A stretch of DNA of 63,226 bases, filler included, from Octopus bimaculoides (lineage: Eukaryota), in assembly GCF_001194135.2 (NCBI RefSeq). It is 6 parts of 5 records of this genome, joined end to end, with 100 filler letters (N's around TTAATTAATTAA, not from the genome) between each part and the next. Parts side by side here need not be neighbours in the genome. Positions count along the whole stretch, not along the records: positions 19,601 to 29,022 come from NC_068995.1; 5 more parts are not named here. One strand, written 5' to 3'. Positions 19,501 to 35,377 of the stretch are shown here, one piece after another (the first letter of the stretch is position 1; every line of letters starts with the position of its first letter). The position numbers and the translations under genes were made by a program. The notes beneath the pieces are model-generated. The model did not search any database. It was given only the letters and a program-made list of their open reading frames with translations, and was not told the origin of the DNA.

Positions 19501-21664
19501 NNNNNNNNNNNNNNNNNNNNNNNNNNNNNNNNNNNNNNNNNNNNTTAATTAATTAANNNNNNNNNNNNNNNNNNNNNNNNNNNNNNNNNNNNNNNNNNNN
19601 TATATACATATATATGACAGGCTTCTTTCAGTTTCCGTCTACCAAATCCACTCACAAGGCTTTGGTCGTCCCGAGGCTATAGCAGAAGACACTTGCCCAA
19701 GGTGCCACGGAGTGGGACTGAACCCGGAACCATGTGGTTGGTAAGCAAGCTACTTACCACACAGCCACTCCTGTGAATTTATTAAATTTTCTTAATTTTG
19801 TTCTCCATAAAGATTTAAATATTGATATTATATAGCTACTTTTAACAACAATGATGACAACCACCGCCACCATTTCTACCACTGCCACTGCCATCATCGT
19901 TTAACATTCGTTTTCCATGCTGACATGGGTTAGACAGTTTGACTGGGACCGTTAAACCAGAGTGCTGCACCAGGGTCCAGTCATTTGTTTTGGCTTGGTT
20001 TCTATGGCCGGATGCCCTTCCTAATGCCAACCACTTTTCAGAGTGTACTGTATGTGTCACCAGCACAGGTGCCTTTTTATATGTCACCAGCACTTTGTAA
20101 TTGATATCTATCATTTTTGTGGCCGTTGCCAGTACCGCCTGACTGGCCTTCGTGCCGGTGGCACGTAAAAGCACCCACTACACTCTCGGAGTGGTTGGCG
20201 TTGGGAAGGGCATCCAGCTGTAGAAACTCTGTCAAATCAGATTGGAACCTGGTGTAGCCATCTGGTTTCACCCAGTCCTCAGTCANNNNNNNNNNTGTCA
20301 AATCAGATTGGAACCTGGTGTAGCCATCTGGTTTCACCCAGTCCTCAGTCAAATCGTCCAACCCATGCTAGCATGGAAAGCGGACATTAAACGATGATGA
20401 TATGAACTGATAAGCACAGCTTCTGTGGAGGTGGTATCTGAATTGTTGAGTGTAGAGTCAGCTGATATTTGCAAACAACATGGTACTATGTGACTTATTA
20501 TACCAATCTTTATTGAGAACAGAATTGCCAAGACTGAGATGGTTGAATAATATCCATAATCTCAGTTGATCAGCTTGGAAATCCAAGTGGAAAGTGTAAT
20601 GGTAGTTGCTTCTTAAAGAACCCTATGGAGGAGGTGCCAGAAGACTCTACCCCCAACAACCCTCTCAGGAATAATAGGTGGAGAAGATACTTGAGCACAC
20701 CAACTGCCATAAACTTTATGCTTGCCACTCACTTTCATGCAATTATTACAACTACCATGTTGTCAAGCATCTGAATTCAATTGTTCTTTGTTTGTCATAG
20801 AGGGTAAAAATGGGGTCTGTTATTCACATAAACTTGGTGTTAAGCTTTGGTTTGAACTTAAGATCATTGGTTCCCAAAACTACTTCCTTAAAAATCAATC
20901 TCGGTCATCACAGCTCTTGTAAATACTGCAATCCAAGTTCAACTAAGAAAGCTTTAGCGTTAATCTTTTAGCATTCAGATTATTCTGTCAAATGTAATGG
21001 TTATTTACTCACATTGTTTTGAATTAATTATGCAGTATCTTGTAGTTTTAAGATTTCAATGATGTGACTGTTTACTTTTAGAATAACACTGTAGGGTAAG
21101 TGTGAGAGGCTAGACCTGGCTTATTTGAACATAAAAACAGGTAGAATATTTGGGCCAGATGTGGTCAGTTTAAATATTAAAGGGTTAAAGAAACTGGAGG
21201 TAGAATAAAAGTTACAACTGTTCTGTAGTAGCAAGTTAACTTGTAACAACTTAATATCTGTTAAATATTAAGAAAAATTTACATTTACAGAACATAAGCA
21301 GTTATGAGAGTGGATGTGAAATAATACTCCGGTGTAGATGCCTGCTACTTGTAAACATAATAGGTAAGTGTTAGTATACTTGATATAGTAAAACCAAGAA
21401 ATTTAAATTAATTGAATTAATCATGAATTTGGTCTTAGCCAAATAATAAGGTGAAGAGTCATGCCAAAGAATCAAGAGCAACACCTGTTGATCATGCAGG
21501 ATATCATTCATGTCAAGTGAATAATTACAATAATTAGCTAAAGACTATTTCACAGCATTTGCAATGTTGTTTTTTGGTTCAAGGTTATCCCTGAGCAAGC
21601 AGACCTATGATCAAAGCTGTTCTAGCCATGACCATCCCACCTGTTTTCAGAGACCTCTAGGATT

Positions 21665-22010
21665 AAACTGTGAAGGTGCATGGCTCACTGGTTAGCATGT
21701 TGGGCTCACAGTCATGAGGTAGTAAGTTTGATTCCCAGATCAGGCTGTGTATTGTGTTCTTGAGCAAGACACTTTATTTCATGTTGCTTCAGTTCACTCA
21801 GCTGTGAAAATGAGTTGTGATGTCACTGGTGCCAAGCTGTATCGGCCTTTGCTTTTCCCTTGGATAACATCGGTGTCATGAAGAGGGGAGGCTGGTATAC
21901 ATGGACGACTGCTGGTCTTCCATTAACATCCTTGCCCTGACTTGTGCCTTGGAGGGAAACTTTCTAGGTGCAATCCCATGGTCATTCTTAATGAAAGGGG
22001 GTCATTACCC
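21665..22010 (+). mobile_element. tRNA-derived SINE with a V/CORE-like central block
   Basis: tRNA-like head GGTGCATGGCTCACTGGTTAGC...GTTTGATTCCC followed by TTGTGTTCTTGAGCAAGACACTTTA. Confidence 0.6.
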
Positions 22011-22344
22011 GTTTTACCCTAGGATTAAATTATTTGTGTTCGTTCTTTGCTTAAAAAAGTAGGGGAGGGTGTGATTATGAGCACTGTCCTATCACAAAAA
22101 AATTGAGCCCCAGGTTTCACTTATGTTACATTCTCTGAGTAAACAACTAGGTTATACAAAAGCAGGTTACTTTTTTTTACAGAATAAGATATCTCAATTT
22201 TCCAATCTATTTAAACTAATACCTATATTCTCTCAACAAGGCAGACAGAGATAAGGACATAACATGATTTCAGAGAGAAGAGTTCAAATTCAAATCTTAT
22301 TTTTAAAACTTAAAGAAATTAGTAATTAATAAATAATGATTTAC

Positions 22345-22459
22345 GTCGCTAGCTTTCTTTTTCACTGCTTTCCTTTCATAACTACGTTCAAAAGCATCGG
22401 CCAATCTTCTCAAGTCTCTTCCAAGTGCATGTGCTTCTTGTTCCTTTGCATAATCTTCA
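22345..22459 (-). CDS. Internal coding exon of a BH3-containing (Bcl-2-family or BH3-only) protein
   Basis: Strong acceptor (ttttcccttttttcttttttttttcag) and donor GAC|GTAAAT. 115 nt, phase 2 in and phase 0 out. Encodes EDYAKEQEAHALGRDLRRLADAFERSYERKAVKKKASD; LGRDLRRLADAF fits the BH3 pattern. Confidence 0.75.
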
Positions 22460-22949
22460 CTGAAAAAAAAAAGAAAAAAGGGAAAAATATAAAGTTTGAA
22501 CAAGAAAAGAATTAAAAGAAAAAAAACTTAACAACAAATCTTAAGTTTACTAACAGAACAAGCAGCTTGTGGTCATCATTAGCCATGAGGCCAGCAATTT
22601 CAGAGGAAGGGGTATATTGATTACATCGACCCCAGTACTCAACTGGTACTTATTTTATCTACCCCAAAAGGATGAAAGTTGACCTTGGTGGAATTTGAAC
22701 TCAGGACATAAAAACAGACAAAATGCCACAAAGCATTTTGCCTGATGTGCTAACAATTCTGCCAGCTCACTGCCTTCTTGTGCGAAGAAAAAAAATCAAC
22801 CAAAAGCTTTCATTTATGAAATTCTTAAATATTTAAAGGTATAACGTTAAAATTAGAGATATTGGGGAGAGATCATTTTTTTTTCTAACCATTTAGCATT
22901 CAAATTACTTTGTCAAATGTAATGTTTATTTACTCTTTTTTTACTCTTT

Positions 22950-23375
22950 TACTTGTTTCAGTCATTTGACTGCAGCCATGCTGGAGCACCGCCTTTAGTC
23001 GAGCAAATCGACCCCAGGACTTATTCTTTGTAAGCCTAGTACTCATTCTATCGGTCTCTTTTGCCGAACCGCTAAGTTACAGGATCAGATAGCACTGTAG
23101 CAACGGCAGAAACCAAAGGTTGGTGAGTATTGGTAAATGATTCTATCGGTTGTCAAGCGATGTTGGGAAGTGGACAAACACAGACACACAAACATATACA
23201 CACACATACATATATATATACATTCTTTCAGTTTCCATCTACCAAATCCACTCACAAGGCTTTGGTCGGCCCGAGGCTATAGTAGAAGACACTTGCCCAA
23301 GGTGCCACGCAGTGGGACTGAACCCAGAACCATGTGATTGGTAAGTAAGCTACTTACCACACAGCCATTCCTGCG
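22950..23375 (-). mobile_element. SINE family B (tRNA head GGCGCAGGAATGGCTGTGTGGTAAG, CORE-like TTGGGCAAGTGTCTTC) with an extended tail
   Basis: Related copies at about 19615, 24795, 28755, 34205, 37050, 43615, 53185, 55095 and 57905. Confidence 0.85.
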
Positions 23376-26300
23376 CCTGTGTATTTGTTCATAGTGTTTT
23401 GAATTAATCATGCATTATCTCATAGCTTCAAATTTTCAATTATGTGATTGTTTAATTTTGGTGGGTAGGTGTGAGAGGCCAAATCTAACCTGTTAGAACA
23501 TAAAACAAGTAGAACATTTGGGCCAGATATGGTTGGTTTGAATACTAAAGGGCTAAAGATTTTTAATAGTTTTAGTTTGCAAGAAGTAAATGTCCATGGC
23601 CTTCACAGGTTCTCCAAAACAAATGAGGTAAACAACAGACATTCCTGAACAACTGCAGGAAAAACTTGACCAAGGAGGGAATTCCAGCTGATTGACATTC
23701 AGGAGGTAAGGATTGTACATAACAGAAGATACAATAGAAGATGAAAAAAAACAGGGACAAGTTGGGTAGACCCAAGTGAACAAGATATGAGACCGGCCAG
23801 TTGCAAGGATCAGATAGCACTGTAGCAACGGCAGAAACCAAAGGTTGGTGAGTATTGGTAAATGATTCTATGCCAATCAGTTAAGTGGCATTTTTGCTGC
23901 AGACTTGAATGTTTGCCAGGAGCACAACAGCAGCAGTCCCACCACCATTCTAGGTATGAGAGTATCTGATAATAAAAGGCAGAATTCTCAACAAATATCA
24001 GAATTGGAAGCTCTGGTTCCAAGTACAGAATCGCTTTAAATATGAAACAACACACACACACACACACACAAACACACACTAAAAATGTCTGATGTGCATG
24101 TTAACAGTCCGAAGAAAATATAAATGGTGTCAAACTAGCAGAAGTCTTCTTTTAACAAATGTAACCCAGGATTGCTCTTTATGAACTTACTAACAGGCAG
24201 TTAAATTTGCCTCCAACACTCTGTATTGTCTTACATGTGTATGTGTGTGTGAACCAAGTGGCAAGTACATAGGAGCTAGACATGTTAAAAATAACAGCCA
24301 AATCTACCTTAAATCAAGACTTTTTGTCTTTAGTAAAAACAGACATAAAATATTCACTCACTGACATACTCCCACCTCTGGGTCACTGGTGTGCTACCAC
24401 CTCTTTCTCTCTCTCTTTGCCTTTTTTTTCTTGTTATTATAATAGCCCCTCCAACACAGACCAGGTTGGGTTCATGCAAACTTCATTCAGACATTCCTCA
24501 CCCAGTTGTCTCTTCCCCTCAATCACCACTGTTACACCTACTAACCCCACCCCACCAACAAACTAGCAACTATAACCAATCCTTCTTTTCCAGAATCCAT
24601 CCCTCTACAACTCCTTCTTTGCTCATGATTCTCTTGTTGATTAGCTATGATTCAAGGAAGAACATCACCAGGTCTCAGAAGGCCTTAAAAAAAAAATGGC
24701 AATGGCAGGTACTGCCTTTTCCTCTAAGACCTAACTAGTGAGAAAAAAAAAAAATGTAACAAAAAAAACTTATAAAATTACCAATCTTTTATCTGTTTCT
24801 TTTACTTGTTTCAGTCACATGACTGCAGCTATGCTGGGGCACCAACTTGAAGGGTTTTTTAGTCAAGCAAATCGACCCCAGGGCTTCTTTTGCCGGATTG
24901 AAGTTACAGGGACATAAATATAGTTGTCAAGTAGGGGGGGTGGGACAAATACACACACACAAAACACACACATACACATATATACATATAAAAATGACGG
25001 TCTTCTTTCAGTTTCTGTCTACCACGTCTATTCACAAGGTTTTGGTCAGCCTGTGACTATAGCAGAAGACACTTGCCCAAGATGCCATGCAGTGGGACTG
25101 AACCCAGAACCATGTGGTTGGGAAGCAAACGCCTAAAAGCAAAAAGTTACAGAAACGTTTTGTGATTAAATTTTACAAATATGACAAGTTTACTAATGGT
25201 TAGATGCCTTCAGAATATTTCTGTTCATCTTAAAGTAAAATACCAAGATGACATAATTTACCCAACAAAACTTGATGTGTGTGTGTGTATGGGGAGGAGA
25301 CATACTAAATAAAATTCCATAACTATGAGCGGTAGGTAAGGTACATTAGTCAGCGGGCAAGTGTTGTTAACTTGCACTATATAACAAAAGACAAGCATAC
25401 AGTCATCTTGACCATGACAGAATTAGTGGGAAGAGCAGCTCTAATGGGGGGAAGGGGATAGTAGTAGACAGAGAGAAAGAGGAAAGGTTGTACAGTGGAA
25501 AAACATGAAAATGACTGTGACAGTTCTACTTTTAAAAGATCATTATCATGGGATTTCCTCTTGTATATATTTTAGATATATTTTTAAAGCAAAGCAGTGA
25601 CGTCAACAAGGAAAATACCAACACTCCAACTGCAAAAATATTTTTTCAGTTAACTCATGAAGGATTTCGTTATAAGTTGCAGTTTTTTTGCAACTGAACA
25701 AATTTATTGATACAATGTGTTTCAAGTTCTTACCATCCTGTTGTTTAAATTTGTTTTCATTAACAAGAGTACCCTTTTTTCTAAAAATGACAGGCTGTGA
25801 TTTGAAGAAATTGTTTCTAGTAGGACAAGCAGCCCTGTATAAGTCTCTTCATTATCAGTAAAATGGAAAGGAGTGTTATTAGGCAAGTTTCCTATACACT
25901 GTTAAATCATCAAAATGTTTTCAGCATAAAACACGCACACACACACACACACACACACAAAGGACATAGTTGTGACCAGGTACTGGCTCTCATGGCTTCT
26001 GATCTTAACTGATTGGAAGTGTTATCATATACATTGTTTTGTCTTGGTATAAAAGATGGGCTACAGCAAATATTCTGCTCAATACCACAGATTTGAGTGT
26101 CAGTTATTTGACCTTAACCAGTTCAACATGACACTTAGTGGCTGACGATATGTGCATCTCTGATCACGAGCACAAGTAGTGGGGGAGCATCATAACCATG
26201 TGTTGAGAGGAATTCTGTGGGGCTTGAATAATTCACCTCTGGAAACATGGGTGTTTTGTTCATCATCCTTAAGTAACCCTTATTCAAGGACCTTTTGAGC

Positions 26301-28342
26301 AGAATGGGCTACTCAACCTGAAGAAAATTTTAACTGGGTCCCATCTGCAAGGTCATGTGCTGTTTATCTAGATATGAGATCACTATGTTGTGCACATATG
26401 GTTGTGATGCATGTGCCTGGTGTATCCTTATCANNNNNNNNNNCACTATGTTGTGCACATATGGTTGTGATGCATGTGCCTGGTGTATCCTTATCAGACA
26501 GGTAGTCATGATGGGTATACTGGGTTTCATATATTTTACCCCAGTGTCACTTTGATAGCATGCACTGCTCTCTCACTCAATAATAATAATAATAATAATG
26601 AAAATCTTTTCTACTATAGGCAGAAGGCCTGAAATTTTGGGGGAAGGGGCAAGTTGATTACATCGACCCCAGTACTGAAATGGTACTTAATTTATCAACC
26701 CTGAAAGGATGAAAGGCAAAGTCAACCTCAGTGGTTTTTTAAAATCCAGAATGTAGTGACAGGTGAAATACCACTAAGCATTTCATCAAGCATGCTAATG
26801 ATTCTGCCAGCTCACTGCCATAATAATAACAATAATAATGATGGTTTCAAGTTTTGACACAAGGCTAACAATTTCAGAGGAGGGACCAAGTTGATTAAAT
26901 CAAACCCCAGTGCTCAACAAGCATTGTTTTATCAACCTGAGTGCTCAATAGAATTTGTTTCATTGACCCCAGTGTTCAGCAATACTTGATTTATCGACCC
27001 CAAAAGGATGAAAGGCGAAGTTGACCTCAGTAGAATTTGAACTCAGAACATGAAGCTGAATAATAAATAAATTTCAACAAAGAACAGGGATAATAGCAGC
27101 AATGCGATGATGTCATTCTACTAATTCAAAGTGGGTTAGAGAAATGGAAAAAAAAGAGGATTTGCAACGGCTGCAGCAGCAGAACAGCGCGCGACTGCTG
27201 AAACCGTTTCCCACAACGACTGGAGGCACTGGGCCGCCGGCGGACGCTGGAGAGGAAGGAAGGAAGACAAGAGAGTTATTGAGGTTCGTGGAGCCGCAAA
27301 GTGTGCAGCACCGTCAGACTAGCGCACTGTATACGGGCGGGCACAGGCTGGGTGAAAAAATTGAAGGCTTCGCTGGTGAGCAATCTGAGAGTTTGTAAAA
27401 AAAGATGAGAGACAAAAGCAGAAACAGAAGTTTCTTAACCCTTTAGCATTTAAACCAACCATATCTGACCCAAATATTCTTCCTGTGTTATGTTCAAACT
27501 AGCCAGAACTGGCCTCTTACACATACCCTACAATGCCATACCTGCCTTGTTGATTGTGCAATGGTAAATTACGAAAATAATGAGGCTAGTGTATTTACCC
27601 CAAGAGCGCAGTGAAACAGATACCCAGGTTTGTGAAAGTAATGTTAGTACATTAAATGCAAAGTGTGAACGAGTAGTGTGTGTTTGTGTGACTTGTTGGT
27701 TGTGCAATGGTAAATTTAGGAAAACGGTAAGGCTAGTGTATTGATTGCATAGAATAGCCAATACAGATTGGAGGTCAAAAGTACCTATGAAATCAAGAGA
27801 CCAAAGCATTCTTAGAAAAAGTATTTGGTACAGTTTTAACCCTTTAGCATTCAGATTATTCTATCAAATGTAATGCTTATACATTCAAATTATTTGATTT
27901 ACTCATGCTTTGTCTTGTAGCTTTGAGATTTCAATGATGTGACTGGTGTTGGTTTGTTTACATTCCTGTAAATTAGTAGTTCAGCGAAAAGAAACTGACA
28001 GGATAAATACCAAACATTAAAAAGTAAATACTAAATACTGGGGTCAATAATTTATTCAACTAAAACCCTTCAAGGTAGAGTCCCAGCATAGTCGCAGACC
28101 AATGATTGAAACAAATAAAAGATAAAAGATTGTACCCAAAAGTTTAATGCTCAGTGATGGATTTAACTTTATTCATCTGCTAGTTTTGCAATTTTGCACT
28201 TCACATTGCATACATGCATACAGCGTAATACAAAGAGAACCGAGAGTTTTGGCAGTCTGACTCCTGGACATAGGAAAGGCACTTGACTGGCTGATGTCTT
28301 CATACAAAAATCAACAGGACTGATATTAGTATAGCTTTTTAA

Positions 28343-28563
28343 CCCTTTTGTTACCGTATTTATTTTGAGATGCTCTGTTTTTCTTTCAATTACGTTAAAT
28401 ATAACAAAGAATTTAGTAAAATAACTTAGTTATCATTCTGCTAGTGTTAGGAACATAAATTGTGACTAAGGTTTGGTGGAAGATTTTAATTCAAAACTTA
28501 TGAAAACAAGACATTTGTCCTCAGAGTCAGAGCCGGTTTCAGCCGGGGTTGGTATCAAAAGGG
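28343..28563. mobile_element. piggyBac-like MITE flanked by TTAA
   Basis: TTAA|CCCTTTTGTTACC ... GGTATCAAAAGGG|TTAA. A second family ending AAAGGG|TTAA occurs at about 20955-21187, 23380-23555, 27436, 27836 and 51810-52010. Confidence 0.75.
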
Positions 28564-28964
28564 TTAAGGATAAGGATGAAAGGCACTGTTAAATATGAAT
28601 AAAGTAGTAAAGTTATTGACTACAATGGCTACAGTGTTTAAACCAATGTGTTGTTTGGGTGTGCCTAAGAAATCACATTACTCGTATGAGCTCACCGAAA
28701 TAGGCACCCAGCAGTGATGAGGAACAAACACAAAGACACACACCTATAGATTTTTTTTTCTTTTTACTTGTTTCAGTTATTTGACTGCAGCCATGCTGGA
28801 GTACTGCCTTTTTGTCAAACAAATCGACCCCAGGACTTAATCTTTGTAAGCCTAGTACTTATTTTATCGGTCTTTTTGGCTGAACCATTAAGTTATGGGG
28901 ATGTAAACATACCAACACCAGTTGTCAAGTGATGGTGGGGGGGACAAACACAGACACACATACA

Positions 28965-29022
<58 letters not shown>

Positions 29023-33090: not shown

Positions 33091-34485
33091 ATCATTATTC
33101 ATATATTCTGCTGTTCCAAACATCCTGAACTACATCCCAAAGGAAGCCAGTCACCTGACTGGAAAAGATTTGCTCACTTCACTGGCTCAATAGACACACA
33201 GTTTCTTCTCTCTCTGCTCCAGTCTCAAACACAAAGGTAAGCAAATTATAGGACTTATACACTTCATCAAGCTGGCTATGAATTCACACTCTGATACTAA
33301 CCAGTTATATGCAGTGTGTAAATTTATTGCTTGTTAGCAGTGGTGTGTAAGGCTTATAGTTGGTTAAGCAACGGTGTATATATATATAACCAATAAGTCC
33401 GTATATAGCTAACTGTAGAGTGTAAGTTCATAAATAGCTGACCTTAGTATGAAATTGCATGTCATGTGGTTAAGTAATGTACACTCCCATACCAACATCA
33501 TCATCATCATTATAACGTCCACTTTTCTATGTTTGCATGTGTCAAAGTTTATTAAGGCAAATTTTCTATGAGCATATGCTTGCACATACATGCATACATA
33601 CATACATGCATGCATACATACATACATGCATGCATACATACATACATACCGAGACCTTTGGAAATATGCTGTGCTTGAGAAGACCCGGCAAGCCAAGTGA
33701 GACCATAATTCGTGGCCTATGCCAGTGGTGTAACCAGCCCACTTATGCGTACCTTTCCTTCATTGGACACTAAACTCTGCTTGCGAAGACCTGATGAGGC
33801 AAGTGAAATTGAAATCAAATTCGATGACAACACCACATGACTGGCATCCATGCTAGTGGAGCACTAAGAGCACCATCTGAGCGGGATCATTGCCAGGGCC
33901 ACTGACTGGCTCCCATGCTGGTGGCACGTAAAAGACACCATTTGAGCGTGGCTGTTGCCAGTACTGCCTGATTGGCCCCTGTGCCGGTGGCACGAAAAGC
34001 ATCCACTACACTCTTGAAGTGGTTGGCATTATGAAGAGCATCCAGCTGTAGAAACTCTGCCAGATCAGATTGGAGCCTGGTGCAGCCATCTGGTTCGCCA
34101 GTCCTCAGTCAAACCATCCAGCCAATGCCAGTATGGAAAGCGGATGTTAAATGATGATGATGATACATACATACATACATGCAAACAAACAAACAAACAA
34201 ACAAACGACTTGCCCAAGGTGCCACACTGTGGGACTGAACCCAAAACCATGTGTTTGGGAATTAAACTTCTTAACCACACAGTTATATCTGCACCTATCA
34301 GTTATGTCTGCATCTATAAGTCACATAAATTCATATGTAGTTGACAGTAGTGTGTAAACCCGTAACTGACTAACACATAGTGCTGCACTGTTTGCTCCTC
34401 ATTATATATGACGTTACTCTGTTCACTTTTTCCTCTGTCCGAGTGTCCAGCCCCTATAAATGTGTCTTACTGTGTCTACTTGCAG

Positions 34486-34594: not shown

Positions 34595-35377
34595 GTAAAA
34601 TATGCTTTAGACTTAGGGTAACTGTTGAGGTTGATTTCATGGTTTATATTGTTGAATACATTGAAAGCATGATGAATGTATTGTACAAAACTTGTGAAGA
34701 ATCAATGAAACCCATCACACTGTTGCAAAGTCTCAAAGAAAATGAAAGAGTTATATTTCTAGGAAACTGCTCAATTATGGTTGTTTGTTCATTTAATCAT
34801 TTTTCCATGCTCTTATAAGTTGCATGGGGGCTTATTTGAAGCTGAGTTTTAGTTAAATTCTCTTCCTGTTATTAGCCACTTATCTGTTTTCCAAGTAAGC
34901 AATTTATTTTATTCCACAAAAATTTTGAAACCAACAAAGTAACCAGTTGACATCAACTGCTTCACTGGGCCATAGATAACTGCAGCTGTGGAATGCCAAT
35001 TTCCATGCGCACCAATTACACACATGCATGTGCATGTGTGCATGTACAAGGGGCTGAATTAAGACTGATACAAGCTCTAAGTACTTAAAAGATATGTATG
35101 TCCCCATACATATGTATTTCAAAATGTAAACAATAATAAACCATAAGATAAATTCTTATTTTTCAAAATGAAACAAAATTAATAGTAAGAAGGAAAATAA
35201 TATTTATTTTTGTATACTTCCATTTTTGAGATATTCACAAATGTCTTTAGTTCACAGCAGGGCCAGATTAAGACCCTTAGAGACCCTAAGCTCTTGAAAT
35301 ATTTTGGTGTCCCCGTATATATGTAAGTCAAAATATAAACAATAATAAACCATAAAATAAATTTTTATTTTTGTACA

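What the first reader, a model, noticed from the sequence alone, without database searches (positions are those of the whole stretch)
22345..22459. Orphan exon encoding a near-consensus BH3 death helix
Seen in sequence: a cleanly spliced exon encoding EQEAHA-LGRDLRRLADAF-ERSYERK. Established: the BH3 pattern is hydrophobic-small-x-x-L-x-x-hydrophobic-small-D-x-hydrophobic (BAD YGRELRRMSDEF, BIM IAQELRRIGDEF, PUMA IGAQLRRMADDL), and every position is satisfied here (22390-22425). BH3-only proteins are poorly catalogued in molluscs because little outside the helix is conserved. Inference: this is either an uncharacterised cephalopod BH3-only apoptosis initiator or the BH3 exon of a divergent invertebrate Bax/Bak-like protein. 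I found no BH1, BH2 or TM exon in this block.
Basis: partly seen in the sequence, partly recalled or inferred. Interest (0 to 1): 0.75.

Follow-up and report, generated by a model that had tools for sequence, protein, structure and literature searches.

The report
BH3 exon of octopus Bax-like gene
The exon is real and encodes a BH3 helix, but it is the second of four coding exons of an ordinary Bax-like cell-death gene of Octopus bimaculoides, not a BH3-only protein. It looked orphaned because the next exon lies in an assembly gap at the edge of the piece.

Summary
Window 22345-22459 (minus strand, 115 nt) is a genuine coding exon with a strong acceptor, a GT donor and one open frame. It encodes EDYAKEQEAHALGRDLRRLADAFERSYERKAVKKKASD.

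It is exon 2 of O. bimaculoides LOC128249508 (XP_052829230.1, 139 aa, "uncharacterized protein"). That model joins a distant exon 1 to this exon and then reads into the intron.

The orthologues in O. vulgaris and O. sinensis (239 aa, both named "apoptosis regulator BAX") and in Argonauta hians (226 aa) use the same acceptor and donor. They continue into a BH1-BH2 exon ending in GGW and a transmembrane exon. They match Pfam Bcl-2 above its threshold, and human BAX is their best solved relative over the full length.

In O. bimaculoides the transmembrane exon is intact 4.9 kb downstream. Alignment with O. vulgaris places the missing BH1-BH2 exon inside a 1,024-N assembly gap that begins at the piece's left edge.

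The BH3 core is identical between the two Octopus species, with four synonymous changes and no replacements. The key Leu and Asp are kept in Argonauta.

Verdict: this is the BH3 exon of a multidomain Bax-like gene whose model was truncated by the gap. The BH3-only reading is not supported. Interest is low.

The parts
22345..22459 (-). Coding exon 2 of 4 (115 nt) of the O. bimaculoides Bax-like gene LOC128249508. Its first base completes a codon begun in exon 1, and it ends on a codon boundary. It encodes helix alpha-2 (BH3) and the start of alpha-3.
   Evidence: Searches give the sequence and the single open frame. Searches show identity to residues 89-126 of XP_052829230.1. Searches show the orthologous 115-nt exon in O. 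vulgaris with the same splice sites. One search gives omega about 0.13.
22390..22425 (-). BH3 motif LGRDLRRLADAF, with hydrophobic positions h1 L, h2 L, h3 L and h4 F, the small residue A, and the conserved D.
   Evidence: It aligns to BAX LSECLKRIGDEL in the full-length alignment of the orthologue. It is identical in O. vulgaris and O. sinensis and reads MGRELQLLADQF in Argonauta. The core has 4 synonymous and 0 replacement changes.
22460..22490 (-). 3' splice site of intron 1: polypyrimidine tract followed by cag.
   Evidence: It is used in the RefSeq model and is conserved in O. vulgaris.
22339..22344 (-). 5' splice site of intron 2 (gtaaat). The O. bimaculoides gene model ignores it; the orthologue uses it.
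   Evidence: The same gtaaatcatta sequence follows the exon in O. vulgaris, where it is spliced to the BH1-BH2 exon.
22303..22344 (-). Intron sequence that the annotated 139-aa model reads as a C-terminal tail (VNHYLLITNFFKF, then stop). Most likely an artefact of the missing exon 3.
   Evidence: Searches show that the model ends here. Searches show why. None of the three O. vulgaris isoforms stops after exon 2.
22460..29022 (-). 3' part of intron 1 (about 26 kb in all). It is repeat-rich. Exon 1 lies off the piece, about 19.7 kb beyond its right edge.
   Evidence: Searches place exon 1 at L001 10001-10263 and exon 2 at L001 36299-36413. The piece equals L001 29736-39157 reversed. One search shows the repeats.
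19601..22338 (-). 5' part of intron 2, running to the contig end. The 1,024-N assembly gap that starts just beyond 19601 hides exon 3 (BH1-BH2).
   Evidence: The contig before the gap is colinear with O. vulgaris up to about 510 bp upstream of exon 3. The contig after the gap resumes 22 bp downstream of exon 3.

Best explanation
The exon is coding exon 2 of a four-exon Bcl-2-family gene of Octopus bimaculoides. This gene is the orthologue of the gene that RefSeq and ENA name 'apoptosis regulator BAX' in O. sinensis and O. vulgaris.

The exon encodes helix alpha-2, the BH3 helix, of a multidomain Bax-like protein:
- Exon 1 gives a fast-evolving, probably disordered N-terminus and helix alpha-1.
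- Exon 3 gives alpha-3 to alpha-8, with a divergent BH1 and a canonical BH2 ending in GGW.
- Exon 4 gives the C-terminal membrane anchor.

By analogy with BAX, which is inference and not tested here, the helix would be packed against the protein's own core in the resting monomer. On activation it would be exposed and would insert its four hydrophobic residues and the Asp into the groove of a second activated molecule, or of a pro-survival Bcl-2 protein. That would drive or restrain oligomerisation and permeabilisation of the mitochondrial outer membrane.

The exon looks orphaned, and the annotated protein looks like a 139-aa BH3-only protein, because exon 3 falls in an assembly gap. The gene model therefore runs on into intron 2.
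For: Shown directly:
- The exon matches residues 89-126 of XP_052829230.1 exactly.
- The O. vulgaris orthologue is 78% identical over 94% of that protein, is 239 aa long and carries the Pfam Bcl-2 domain.
- The Pfam score is 53.5 bits against a cutoff of 31.4.
- The best PDB relatives of the O. vulgaris and Argonauta proteins are BAX, at 6.9e-12 and 2.4e-9. The alignments run from alpha-1 into the C-terminal (alpha-9) helix, nearly to its end in O. vulgaris.
- The O. vulgaris CDS is rebuilt exactly from four GT-AG exons of 275, 115, 228 and 102 nt.
- Argonauta has the same exon boundaries.
- O. bimaculoides exon 4 is intact, with acceptor, open frame and stop, at L001 41296-41394.
- The gap L001 39158-40181 is bracketed by sequence colinear with O. 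vulgaris positions 34286 and 35045, which enclose exon 3 at 34796-35023.
- Selection estimates: omega is about 0.13 for the exon and 0 for the BH3 core (4 synonymous, 0 replacement changes), about 0.12 for alpha-1, and about 0.86 for the first 60 residues.
- A small Bcl-2-family HMM ranks exon 2 and exon 1 first and second among 1,686 open segments of the 46-kb locus, matched to the BH3 and alpha-1 positions.
Against: - Exon 3 of O. bimaculoides itself has not been seen. It is inferred to lie in the gap.
- No transcript data could be consulted, so use of the donor in O. bimaculoides rests on orthology.
- BH1 in the orthologues is unusual: NWGR is replaced by THSR or TRSR.
- BAX leads Bcl-xL and Bcl-2 by only about 5 bits, so the pro-apoptotic assignment is not secure.
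- The structure prediction was too poor to test the fold (mean pLDDT 41).
Confidence: 0.93

Rival explanations
1. The annotated 139-aa product is real. Transcripts read through, or are polyadenylated within, intron 2. This gives an alpha-1 + BH3 protein with a short hydrophobic tail that acts as a BH3-only-like initiator, possibly alongside the full-length isoform.
For: Two annotations (RefSeq and UniProt) carry exactly this product. The tail VNHYLLITNFFKF is hydrophobic. O. vulgaris has the same reading frame and stop in the intron, and an AATAAA a few bases after that stop.
Against: Both models were built on an assembly in which exon 3 is missing, so read-through is the expected artefact. 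The donor gtaaat and exon 4 are conserved and intact. The three O. vulgaris isoforms and the O. sinensis RefSeq protein all continue into exon 3. Similarity of the intron tail is no more than the roughly 90% identity of the surrounding intron. O. bimaculoides has AATAAG, not AATAAA, at that place.
Confidence: 0.07
2. The gene is a pro-survival Bcl-2/Bcl-xL-like protein or a functionally divergent Bcl-2-fold protein, not a Bax-like effector. The exon would then encode the BH3 region of an inhibitor or of a non-apoptotic protein.
For: Bcl-xL and Bcl-2 score only about 5 bits below BAX. Exon 1 plus exon 2 align weakly to BH4 plus BH3 of Bcl-2 (E = 1.8). The BH1 signature NWGR is degenerate (THSR/TRSR), so canonical behaviour cannot be assumed.
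Against: Both octopod proteins, tested separately, have BAX as best hit. Only BAX aligns from alpha-1 into the C-terminal alpha-9 helix. The BH3 has all four hydrophobic positions and the Asp, which is typical of killers. NCBI's pipeline independently names the protein BAX.
Confidence: 0.2
3. The motif is a chance match in an open stretch of AT-rich intron and is not coding.
For: The strict BH3 pattern is expected 0.06 times per piece by chance. Open segments of 70-110 codons are common in the piece.
Against: The exon is part of annotated proteins in four octopod species with conserved splice sites. Its BH3 core is under purifying selection.
Confidence: 0.01

Closest known systems
Apoptosis regulator BAX of Octopus sinensis (XP_029646564.1) and O. 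vulgaris (CAI9734052.1), 239 aa
   Same: These are the orthologues. They are 78% identical over exons 1-2, with the same 115-nt BH3 exon, the same splice sites and an identical BH3 core QEAHALGRDLRRLADAFE. Introns are colinear at about 90% identity.
   Different: The O. bimaculoides model stops after this exon because exon 3 is in an assembly gap. O. bimaculoides starts at the second Met because the first ATG is TCG. There are six replacements in the exon outside the core, and one codex fewer is not implied: exon 4 is one codon shorter.
Vertebrate BAX (for example PDB 1F16, 5W62)
   Same: It is the best solved relative of the orthologues, aligned from alpha-1 through BH3, BH1 and BH2 into the C-terminal helix. 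BH3 has L and D in register. The intron after the BH2 Trp is a family hallmark. From memory only (UniProt isoform delta lacks residues 30-78), a BAX exon boundary falls a few residues after BH3, close to the octopus boundary.
   Different: The match is distant (best score 48.5 bits; identity was not computed). The octopod proteins add about 60 N-terminal residues that evolve almost neutrally. BH1 NWGR is THSR or TRSR. The BH3 (LRRLADAF) looks more like those of BIM, BAD and PUMA than BAX LKRIGDEL. There are four coding exons rather than six (the human count is from memory).
BH3-only proteins PUMA, BAD and BIM
   Same: The exon peptide alone hits only PUMA and BAD BH3 peptides at the top of a PDB search. 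With PUMA it shares EQ-A--G--LRR-AD-----YER.
   Different: The scores are not significant (E = 0.08-0.5; Pfam PUMA 14 bits against a cutoff of 26). The gene has BH1, BH2 and TM exons, so it is not BH3-only.
Cephalopod and mollusc Bcl-2 repertoire in the literature
   Same: Bax and Bak transcripts are reported in the squid Euprymna scolopes (PMC9389742). BAX, BAK and BOK are reported in molluscs (PMC11463336). Oyster Bax and Bak were studied functionally (PMC5550854).
   Different: None of these papers describes this O. bimaculoides locus. PMC5550854 states that no BH3-only homologue was known in molluscs, and this exon does not change that.

Membership tests
Bcl-2 family, multidomain (Bcl-2 fold, Pfam PF00452) | BH3 motif: hydrophobic-x3-L-x2-hydrophobic-small-D-x-hydrophobic, on helix alpha-2 | tested here: met
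   LGRDLRRLADAF at window 22390-22425. It aligns to the BAX BH3.
Bcl-2 family, multidomain (Bcl-2 fold, Pfam PF00452) | Profile match to the Bcl-2 domain above Pfam's gathering score | tested here: met
   The O. vulgaris orthologue scores 53.5 bits against a cutoff of 31.4, covering profile positions 1-100 of 100. This cannot be tested on the O. bimaculoides protein itself because exon 3 is in a gap. The 126-aa part alone gives no hit.
Bcl-2 family, multidomain (Bcl-2 fold, Pfam PF00452) | BH1 signature (NWGR) | tested here: inconclusive
   The orthologues have GGITHSR (Octopus) or GGITRSR (Argonauta) where BAX has GNFNWGR. Only the Arg and the flanking hydrophobic helix are kept.
Bcl-2 family, multidomain (Bcl-2 fold, Pfam PF00452) | BH2 (W-x3-GGW) with the conserved intron right after the Trp codon | tested here: met
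   The O. vulgaris sequence is WVELHGGW followed by gt, and Argonauta has WVERNGGW followed by gt. O. bimaculoides exon 4 starts at the matching acceptor.
Bcl-2 family, multidomain (Bcl-2 fold, Pfam PF00452) | C-terminal hydrophobic membrane anchor | tested here: met
   O. bimaculoides exon 4 encodes FAVLNPTSYNKYIISSLVVCVLAVGIYKWMKR and a stop at L001 41296-41394. This lies outside the window piece.
Bcl-2 family, multidomain (Bcl-2 fold, Pfam PF00452) | Globular all-helical Bcl-2 fold | tested here: inconclusive
   The AlphaFold2 model from a 3-sequence alignment had mean pLDDT 41 and pTM 0.23. It shows nine helices in the expected order, but the 3D model is unusable and no fold search was run.
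Bax subfamily (pore-forming effector) | Closest to BAX rather than to BAK, BOK or pro-survival members | tested here: inconclusive
   BAX is the best PDB hit for both octopod proteins and the only full-length alignment, but its margin over Bcl-xL and Bcl-2 is about 5 bits. No phylogeny with the full mollusc repertoire was possible.
Bax subfamily (pore-forming effector) | Permeabilises the mitochondrial outer membrane and kills cells in a BH3-dependent way | not testable with these tools
   This needs an experiment.
BH3-only proteins | BH3 is the only BH motif, with no BH1, BH2 or Bcl-2 fold | tested here: not met
   The orthologues carry BH1-like, BH2 and TM regions on exons 3 and 4. The O. 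bimaculoides TM exon is present, and the exon 3 position coincides with an assembly gap.

The most novel reading that the evidence does not exclude
Besides the full-length Bax-like protein, the gene may make a short BH3-only-like product. One route is termination in intron 2, which gives the annotated 139-aa protein. The other is skipping of exon 3, which is 228 nt and lies between codon boundaries, so skipping would join BH3 in frame to the membrane anchor. That would resemble the short isoforms of Mcl-1, Bcl-x and Bak. Together with the degenerate BH1 and the BIM/PUMA-like BH3, it would make this gene a source of initiator activity in a phylum where PMC5550854 (2017) reported that no BH3-only protein had been found.
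Probability: 0.08. Interest if true: 0.45.

Novelty: already known. Interest (0 to 1): 0.12.

Why it matters
The scientific value is small. The result corrects one gene model: LOC128249508 / A0A0L8G2G7 is not an uncharacterised 139-aa protein but the 5' half of the O. bimaculoides Bax-like gene.

It also gives a practical caution. A truncated multidomain Bcl-2 gene model looks exactly like a BH3-only protein, with a disordered N-terminus, one BH3 exon and a short hydrophobic tail. Motif-based or BLAST-based hunts for invertebrate BH3-only proteins can therefore pick up such artefacts.

PMC8998228 lists an O. bimaculoides candidate BH3-only protein in its Figure 5. I could not check whether it is this protein.

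The degenerate BH1 (THSR or TRSR instead of NWGR), conserved between Octopus and Argonauta, is a minor point that a Bcl-2 specialist might want to follow up.

Tried and rejected
- The 38-aa peptide was too short for the word-indexed protein search. A 42-aa version found nothing, although the protein is in the collection. The exhaustive HMMER search then found it.
- The peptide alone gave only sub-threshold matches, to PUMA, BAD, CEP152 and DALR. I did not build on the PUMA resemblance.
- Regex and HMM scans for BH1 and BH2 in the piece and in the 46-kb locus found none. This is explained by the assembly gap.
- Rfam found nothing in the piece.
- The AlphaFold2 model was of too low confidence to use, so I ran no fold search.
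- The Argonauta DNA was not exposed to the Python sandbox. I read its exons from the ORF list instead.
- The supplement of PMC8998228 holds only file names, and the paper gives no accession for its O. bimaculoides candidate.
- A chance ORF was considered and rejected on the orthologue evidence.
- Gene loss or pseudogenisation in O. bimaculoides was considered and judged unlikely, because exon 4 and all visible splice sites are intact.

Full report
**Observation**

The feature is on the minus strand. Read 5' to 3', a long polypyrimidine tract ends in cag at 22462-22460. An open stretch then runs from 22459 to 22345 and is followed by gtaaat.

The 115 nt are open in one frame only. After a first base that completes a split codon, they read EDYAKEQEAHALGRDLRRLADAFERSYERKAVKKKASD. 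Exon GC is 41%, against 25% and 32% in the flanking 200 nt.

On its own the motif is not strong evidence:
- A strict BH3 pattern is expected 0.06 times per 9.4-kb piece in six frames.
- Open segments of 70-110 codons are common here.
- The peptate alone, that is the peptide by itself, reaches only E = 0.08-0.5 against PUMA and BAD BH3 peptides in the PDB, and 14 bits against Pfam PUMA, whose cutoff is 26.

**Identity of the exon**

An exhaustive HMMER search of 1.84 billion representative proteins gave one hit, identical over all 38 residues. It is a 139-aa protein, XP_052829230.1 / A0A0L8G2G7, named 'uncharacterized protein LOC128249508' of Octopus bimaculoides.

Its locus (L001, chromosome CM046615.1) contains the window piece at 100% identity, reversed (L001 29736-39157). 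The model has three parts:
- an 88-residue exon 1, about 26 kb upstream and off the piece;
- 13 codons of read-through past the gtaaat donor (VNHYLLITNFFKF, then stop at window 22303-22305).

**Orthologues**

A search with the 139-aa protein found a 239-aa O. vulgaris protein, 78% identical over 94% of the query. It is named 'apoptosis regulator BAX' and carries Pfam PF00452. Its 90% cluster also holds O. sinensis XP_029646564.1, with the same name and length. A 226-aa Argonauta hians protein is 47% identical.

After ...KKKAST the O. vulgaris protein continues as follows:
- CNLDINSYSEFSRILKSLFTNGGITHSRIIVLFFF... (the BH1 region);
- ...YEWVELHGGW (BH2);
- FAVLNPTYYNKYIMLSTVVACMLAIGIYRWMKR (membrane anchor).

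It scores 53.5 bits on Pfam Bcl-2, whose cutoff is 31.4. Its best solved relatives are BAX chains (6.9e-12), aligned from alpha-1 into the C-terminal helix. Bcl-xL and Bcl-2 follow about 5 bits lower. The Argonauta protein also has BAX first.

**Gene structure**

The O. vulgaris CDS is rebuilt exactly from four GT-AG exons of 275, 115, 228 and 102 nt:
- Exon 2 has the same length and the same flanking cag and gtaaatcatta as the window exon.
- Exon 3 ends with the Trp codon of GGW followed by gt, which is the intron position typical of the family.
- Argonauta shows the same boundaries.

**Why the exon looked orphaned**

In O. bimaculoides the last exon is present and intact 4.9 kb downstream. 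It has an acceptor, 32 codons (FAVLNPTSYNKYIISSLVVCVLAVGIYKWMKR) and a stop at L001 41296-41394. Exon 3 is not found anywhere in the 46-kb locus.

The locus has a 1,024-N gap at L001 39158-40181, which begins exactly where the window piece ends (window 19601).
- Intron 2 is colinear with O. vulgaris at 84-92% identity up to O. vulgaris position 34286. A repeat copy then ends the contig.
- The contig after the gap resumes at O. vulgaris position 35045.
- O. vulgaris exon 3 is at 34796-35023, so it lies inside the unassembled interval.

**Selection**

Comparing O. bimaculoides with O. vulgaris:
- The exon has omega of about 0.13.
- The 18-residue core QEAHALGRDLRRLADAFE has four synonymous and no replacement differences.
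- Helix alpha-1 (residues 61-87) has omega of about 0.12.
- The first 60 residues have omega of about 0.86, as expected for a disordered N-terminus.
- In Argonauta the motif is MGRELQLLADQF, so the key Leu and Asp and all hydrophobic positions are kept.

**Mechanism**

What is shown is that the exon encodes the BH3 helix of a multidomain Bcl-2-family protein whose closest solved relative is BAX.

What is inferred from established BAX biology is the rest. The helix would be buried at rest and exposed on activation. It would then bind the groove of another activated molecule or of a pro-survival relative, and so control permeabilisation of the mitochondrial outer membrane.

Two points limit the functional claim. 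BH1 is degenerate (THSR or TRSR instead of NWGR). The margin of BAX over pro-survival members is small. A structure prediction from three sequences was unusable (pLDDT 41).

**Rival readings**

A real short BH3-only-like isoform cannot be excluded without transcript data. It has no support from the orthologues: three O. vulgaris isoforms and the O. sinensis protein all continue into exon 3, and the one read-through isoform stops after exon 3, not after exon 2.

A chance ORF is excluded by the orthologue evidence.

**Literature**

- Bax and Bak transcripts are known in the squid Euprymna (PMC9389742).
- BAX, BAK and BOK are known in molluscs (PMC11463336).
- PMC5550854 noted that no BH3-only homologue was known in molluscs, and this locus does not supply one.
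- PMC8998228 lists an O. bimaculoides candidate BH3-only protein in its Figure 5a. Neither the figure nor any accession is held, so I could not check whether it is this truncated model.

**Verdict**

This is an ordinary exon of a known kind of gene, with a gene-model error caused by an assembly gap. Interest is low.

Noticed in passing
window 20230-20351 and 26381-26496: Two 10-N gaps (20286-20295 and 26434-26443) are each flanked by a perfect direct duplication, of 56 nt and 53 nt. They look like gap-closure artefacts of the assembly rather than biology.
   Followed up: partly
window 27149-27354: A segment of about 206 nt with GC 54% and CpG observed/expected 0.93 (0.30 for the whole piece) sits inside intron 1. 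It carries an 84-aa ORF on the + strand (27144-27398) that is followed by a possible gtgagc donor. It is absent from the orthologous O. vulgaris site, where the flanks are only 44 nt apart. Its origin is unexplained.
   Followed up: partly
window 19601-19773, 23223-23373, 25003-25153 and others: The piece is dense in SINE-like interspersed repeats: a 151-nt family with three copies and several families of 55-99 nt. One copy lies at the very left end of the contig, next to the gap that hides exon 3, which probably explains the assembly break.
   Followed up: partly
window 23081-23146 and 23806-23871: A perfect 66-nt direct repeat with 725 nt between copy starts. It could mark the ends of an inserted element or a local assembly duplication (family D9).
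   Followed up: no
L001 about 9989-10003 (O. bimaculoides exon 1, off the window piece): The first ATG used in O. vulgaris and O. sinensis (MEQNMDN...) is TCG in O. bimaculoides. Its protein therefore starts at the second Met.
   Followed up: yes
L002 35024 onward (O. vulgaris intron 3): O. vulgaris isoform CAI9734053.1 (209 aa) ends ...GGWVRI. It reads through intron 3 and lacks the membrane anchor. A 232-aa isoform has a shortened C-terminus.
   Followed up: partly
L002 BH1 region (exon 3) and P0003: The BH1 signature NWGR is THSR in Octopus and TRSR in Argonauta. The Trp and Gly are otherwise near-invariant, so this is an unusual loss that is conserved across octopods.
   Followed up: partly
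PMC8998228, Figure 5a: The paper lists an O. bimaculoides 'potential BH3-only protein' found by BLAST with Bim, Bad and Bmf. If it is A0A0L8G2G7, it is a truncated Bax-like model. I could not check this because the figure is not held.
   Followed up: partly
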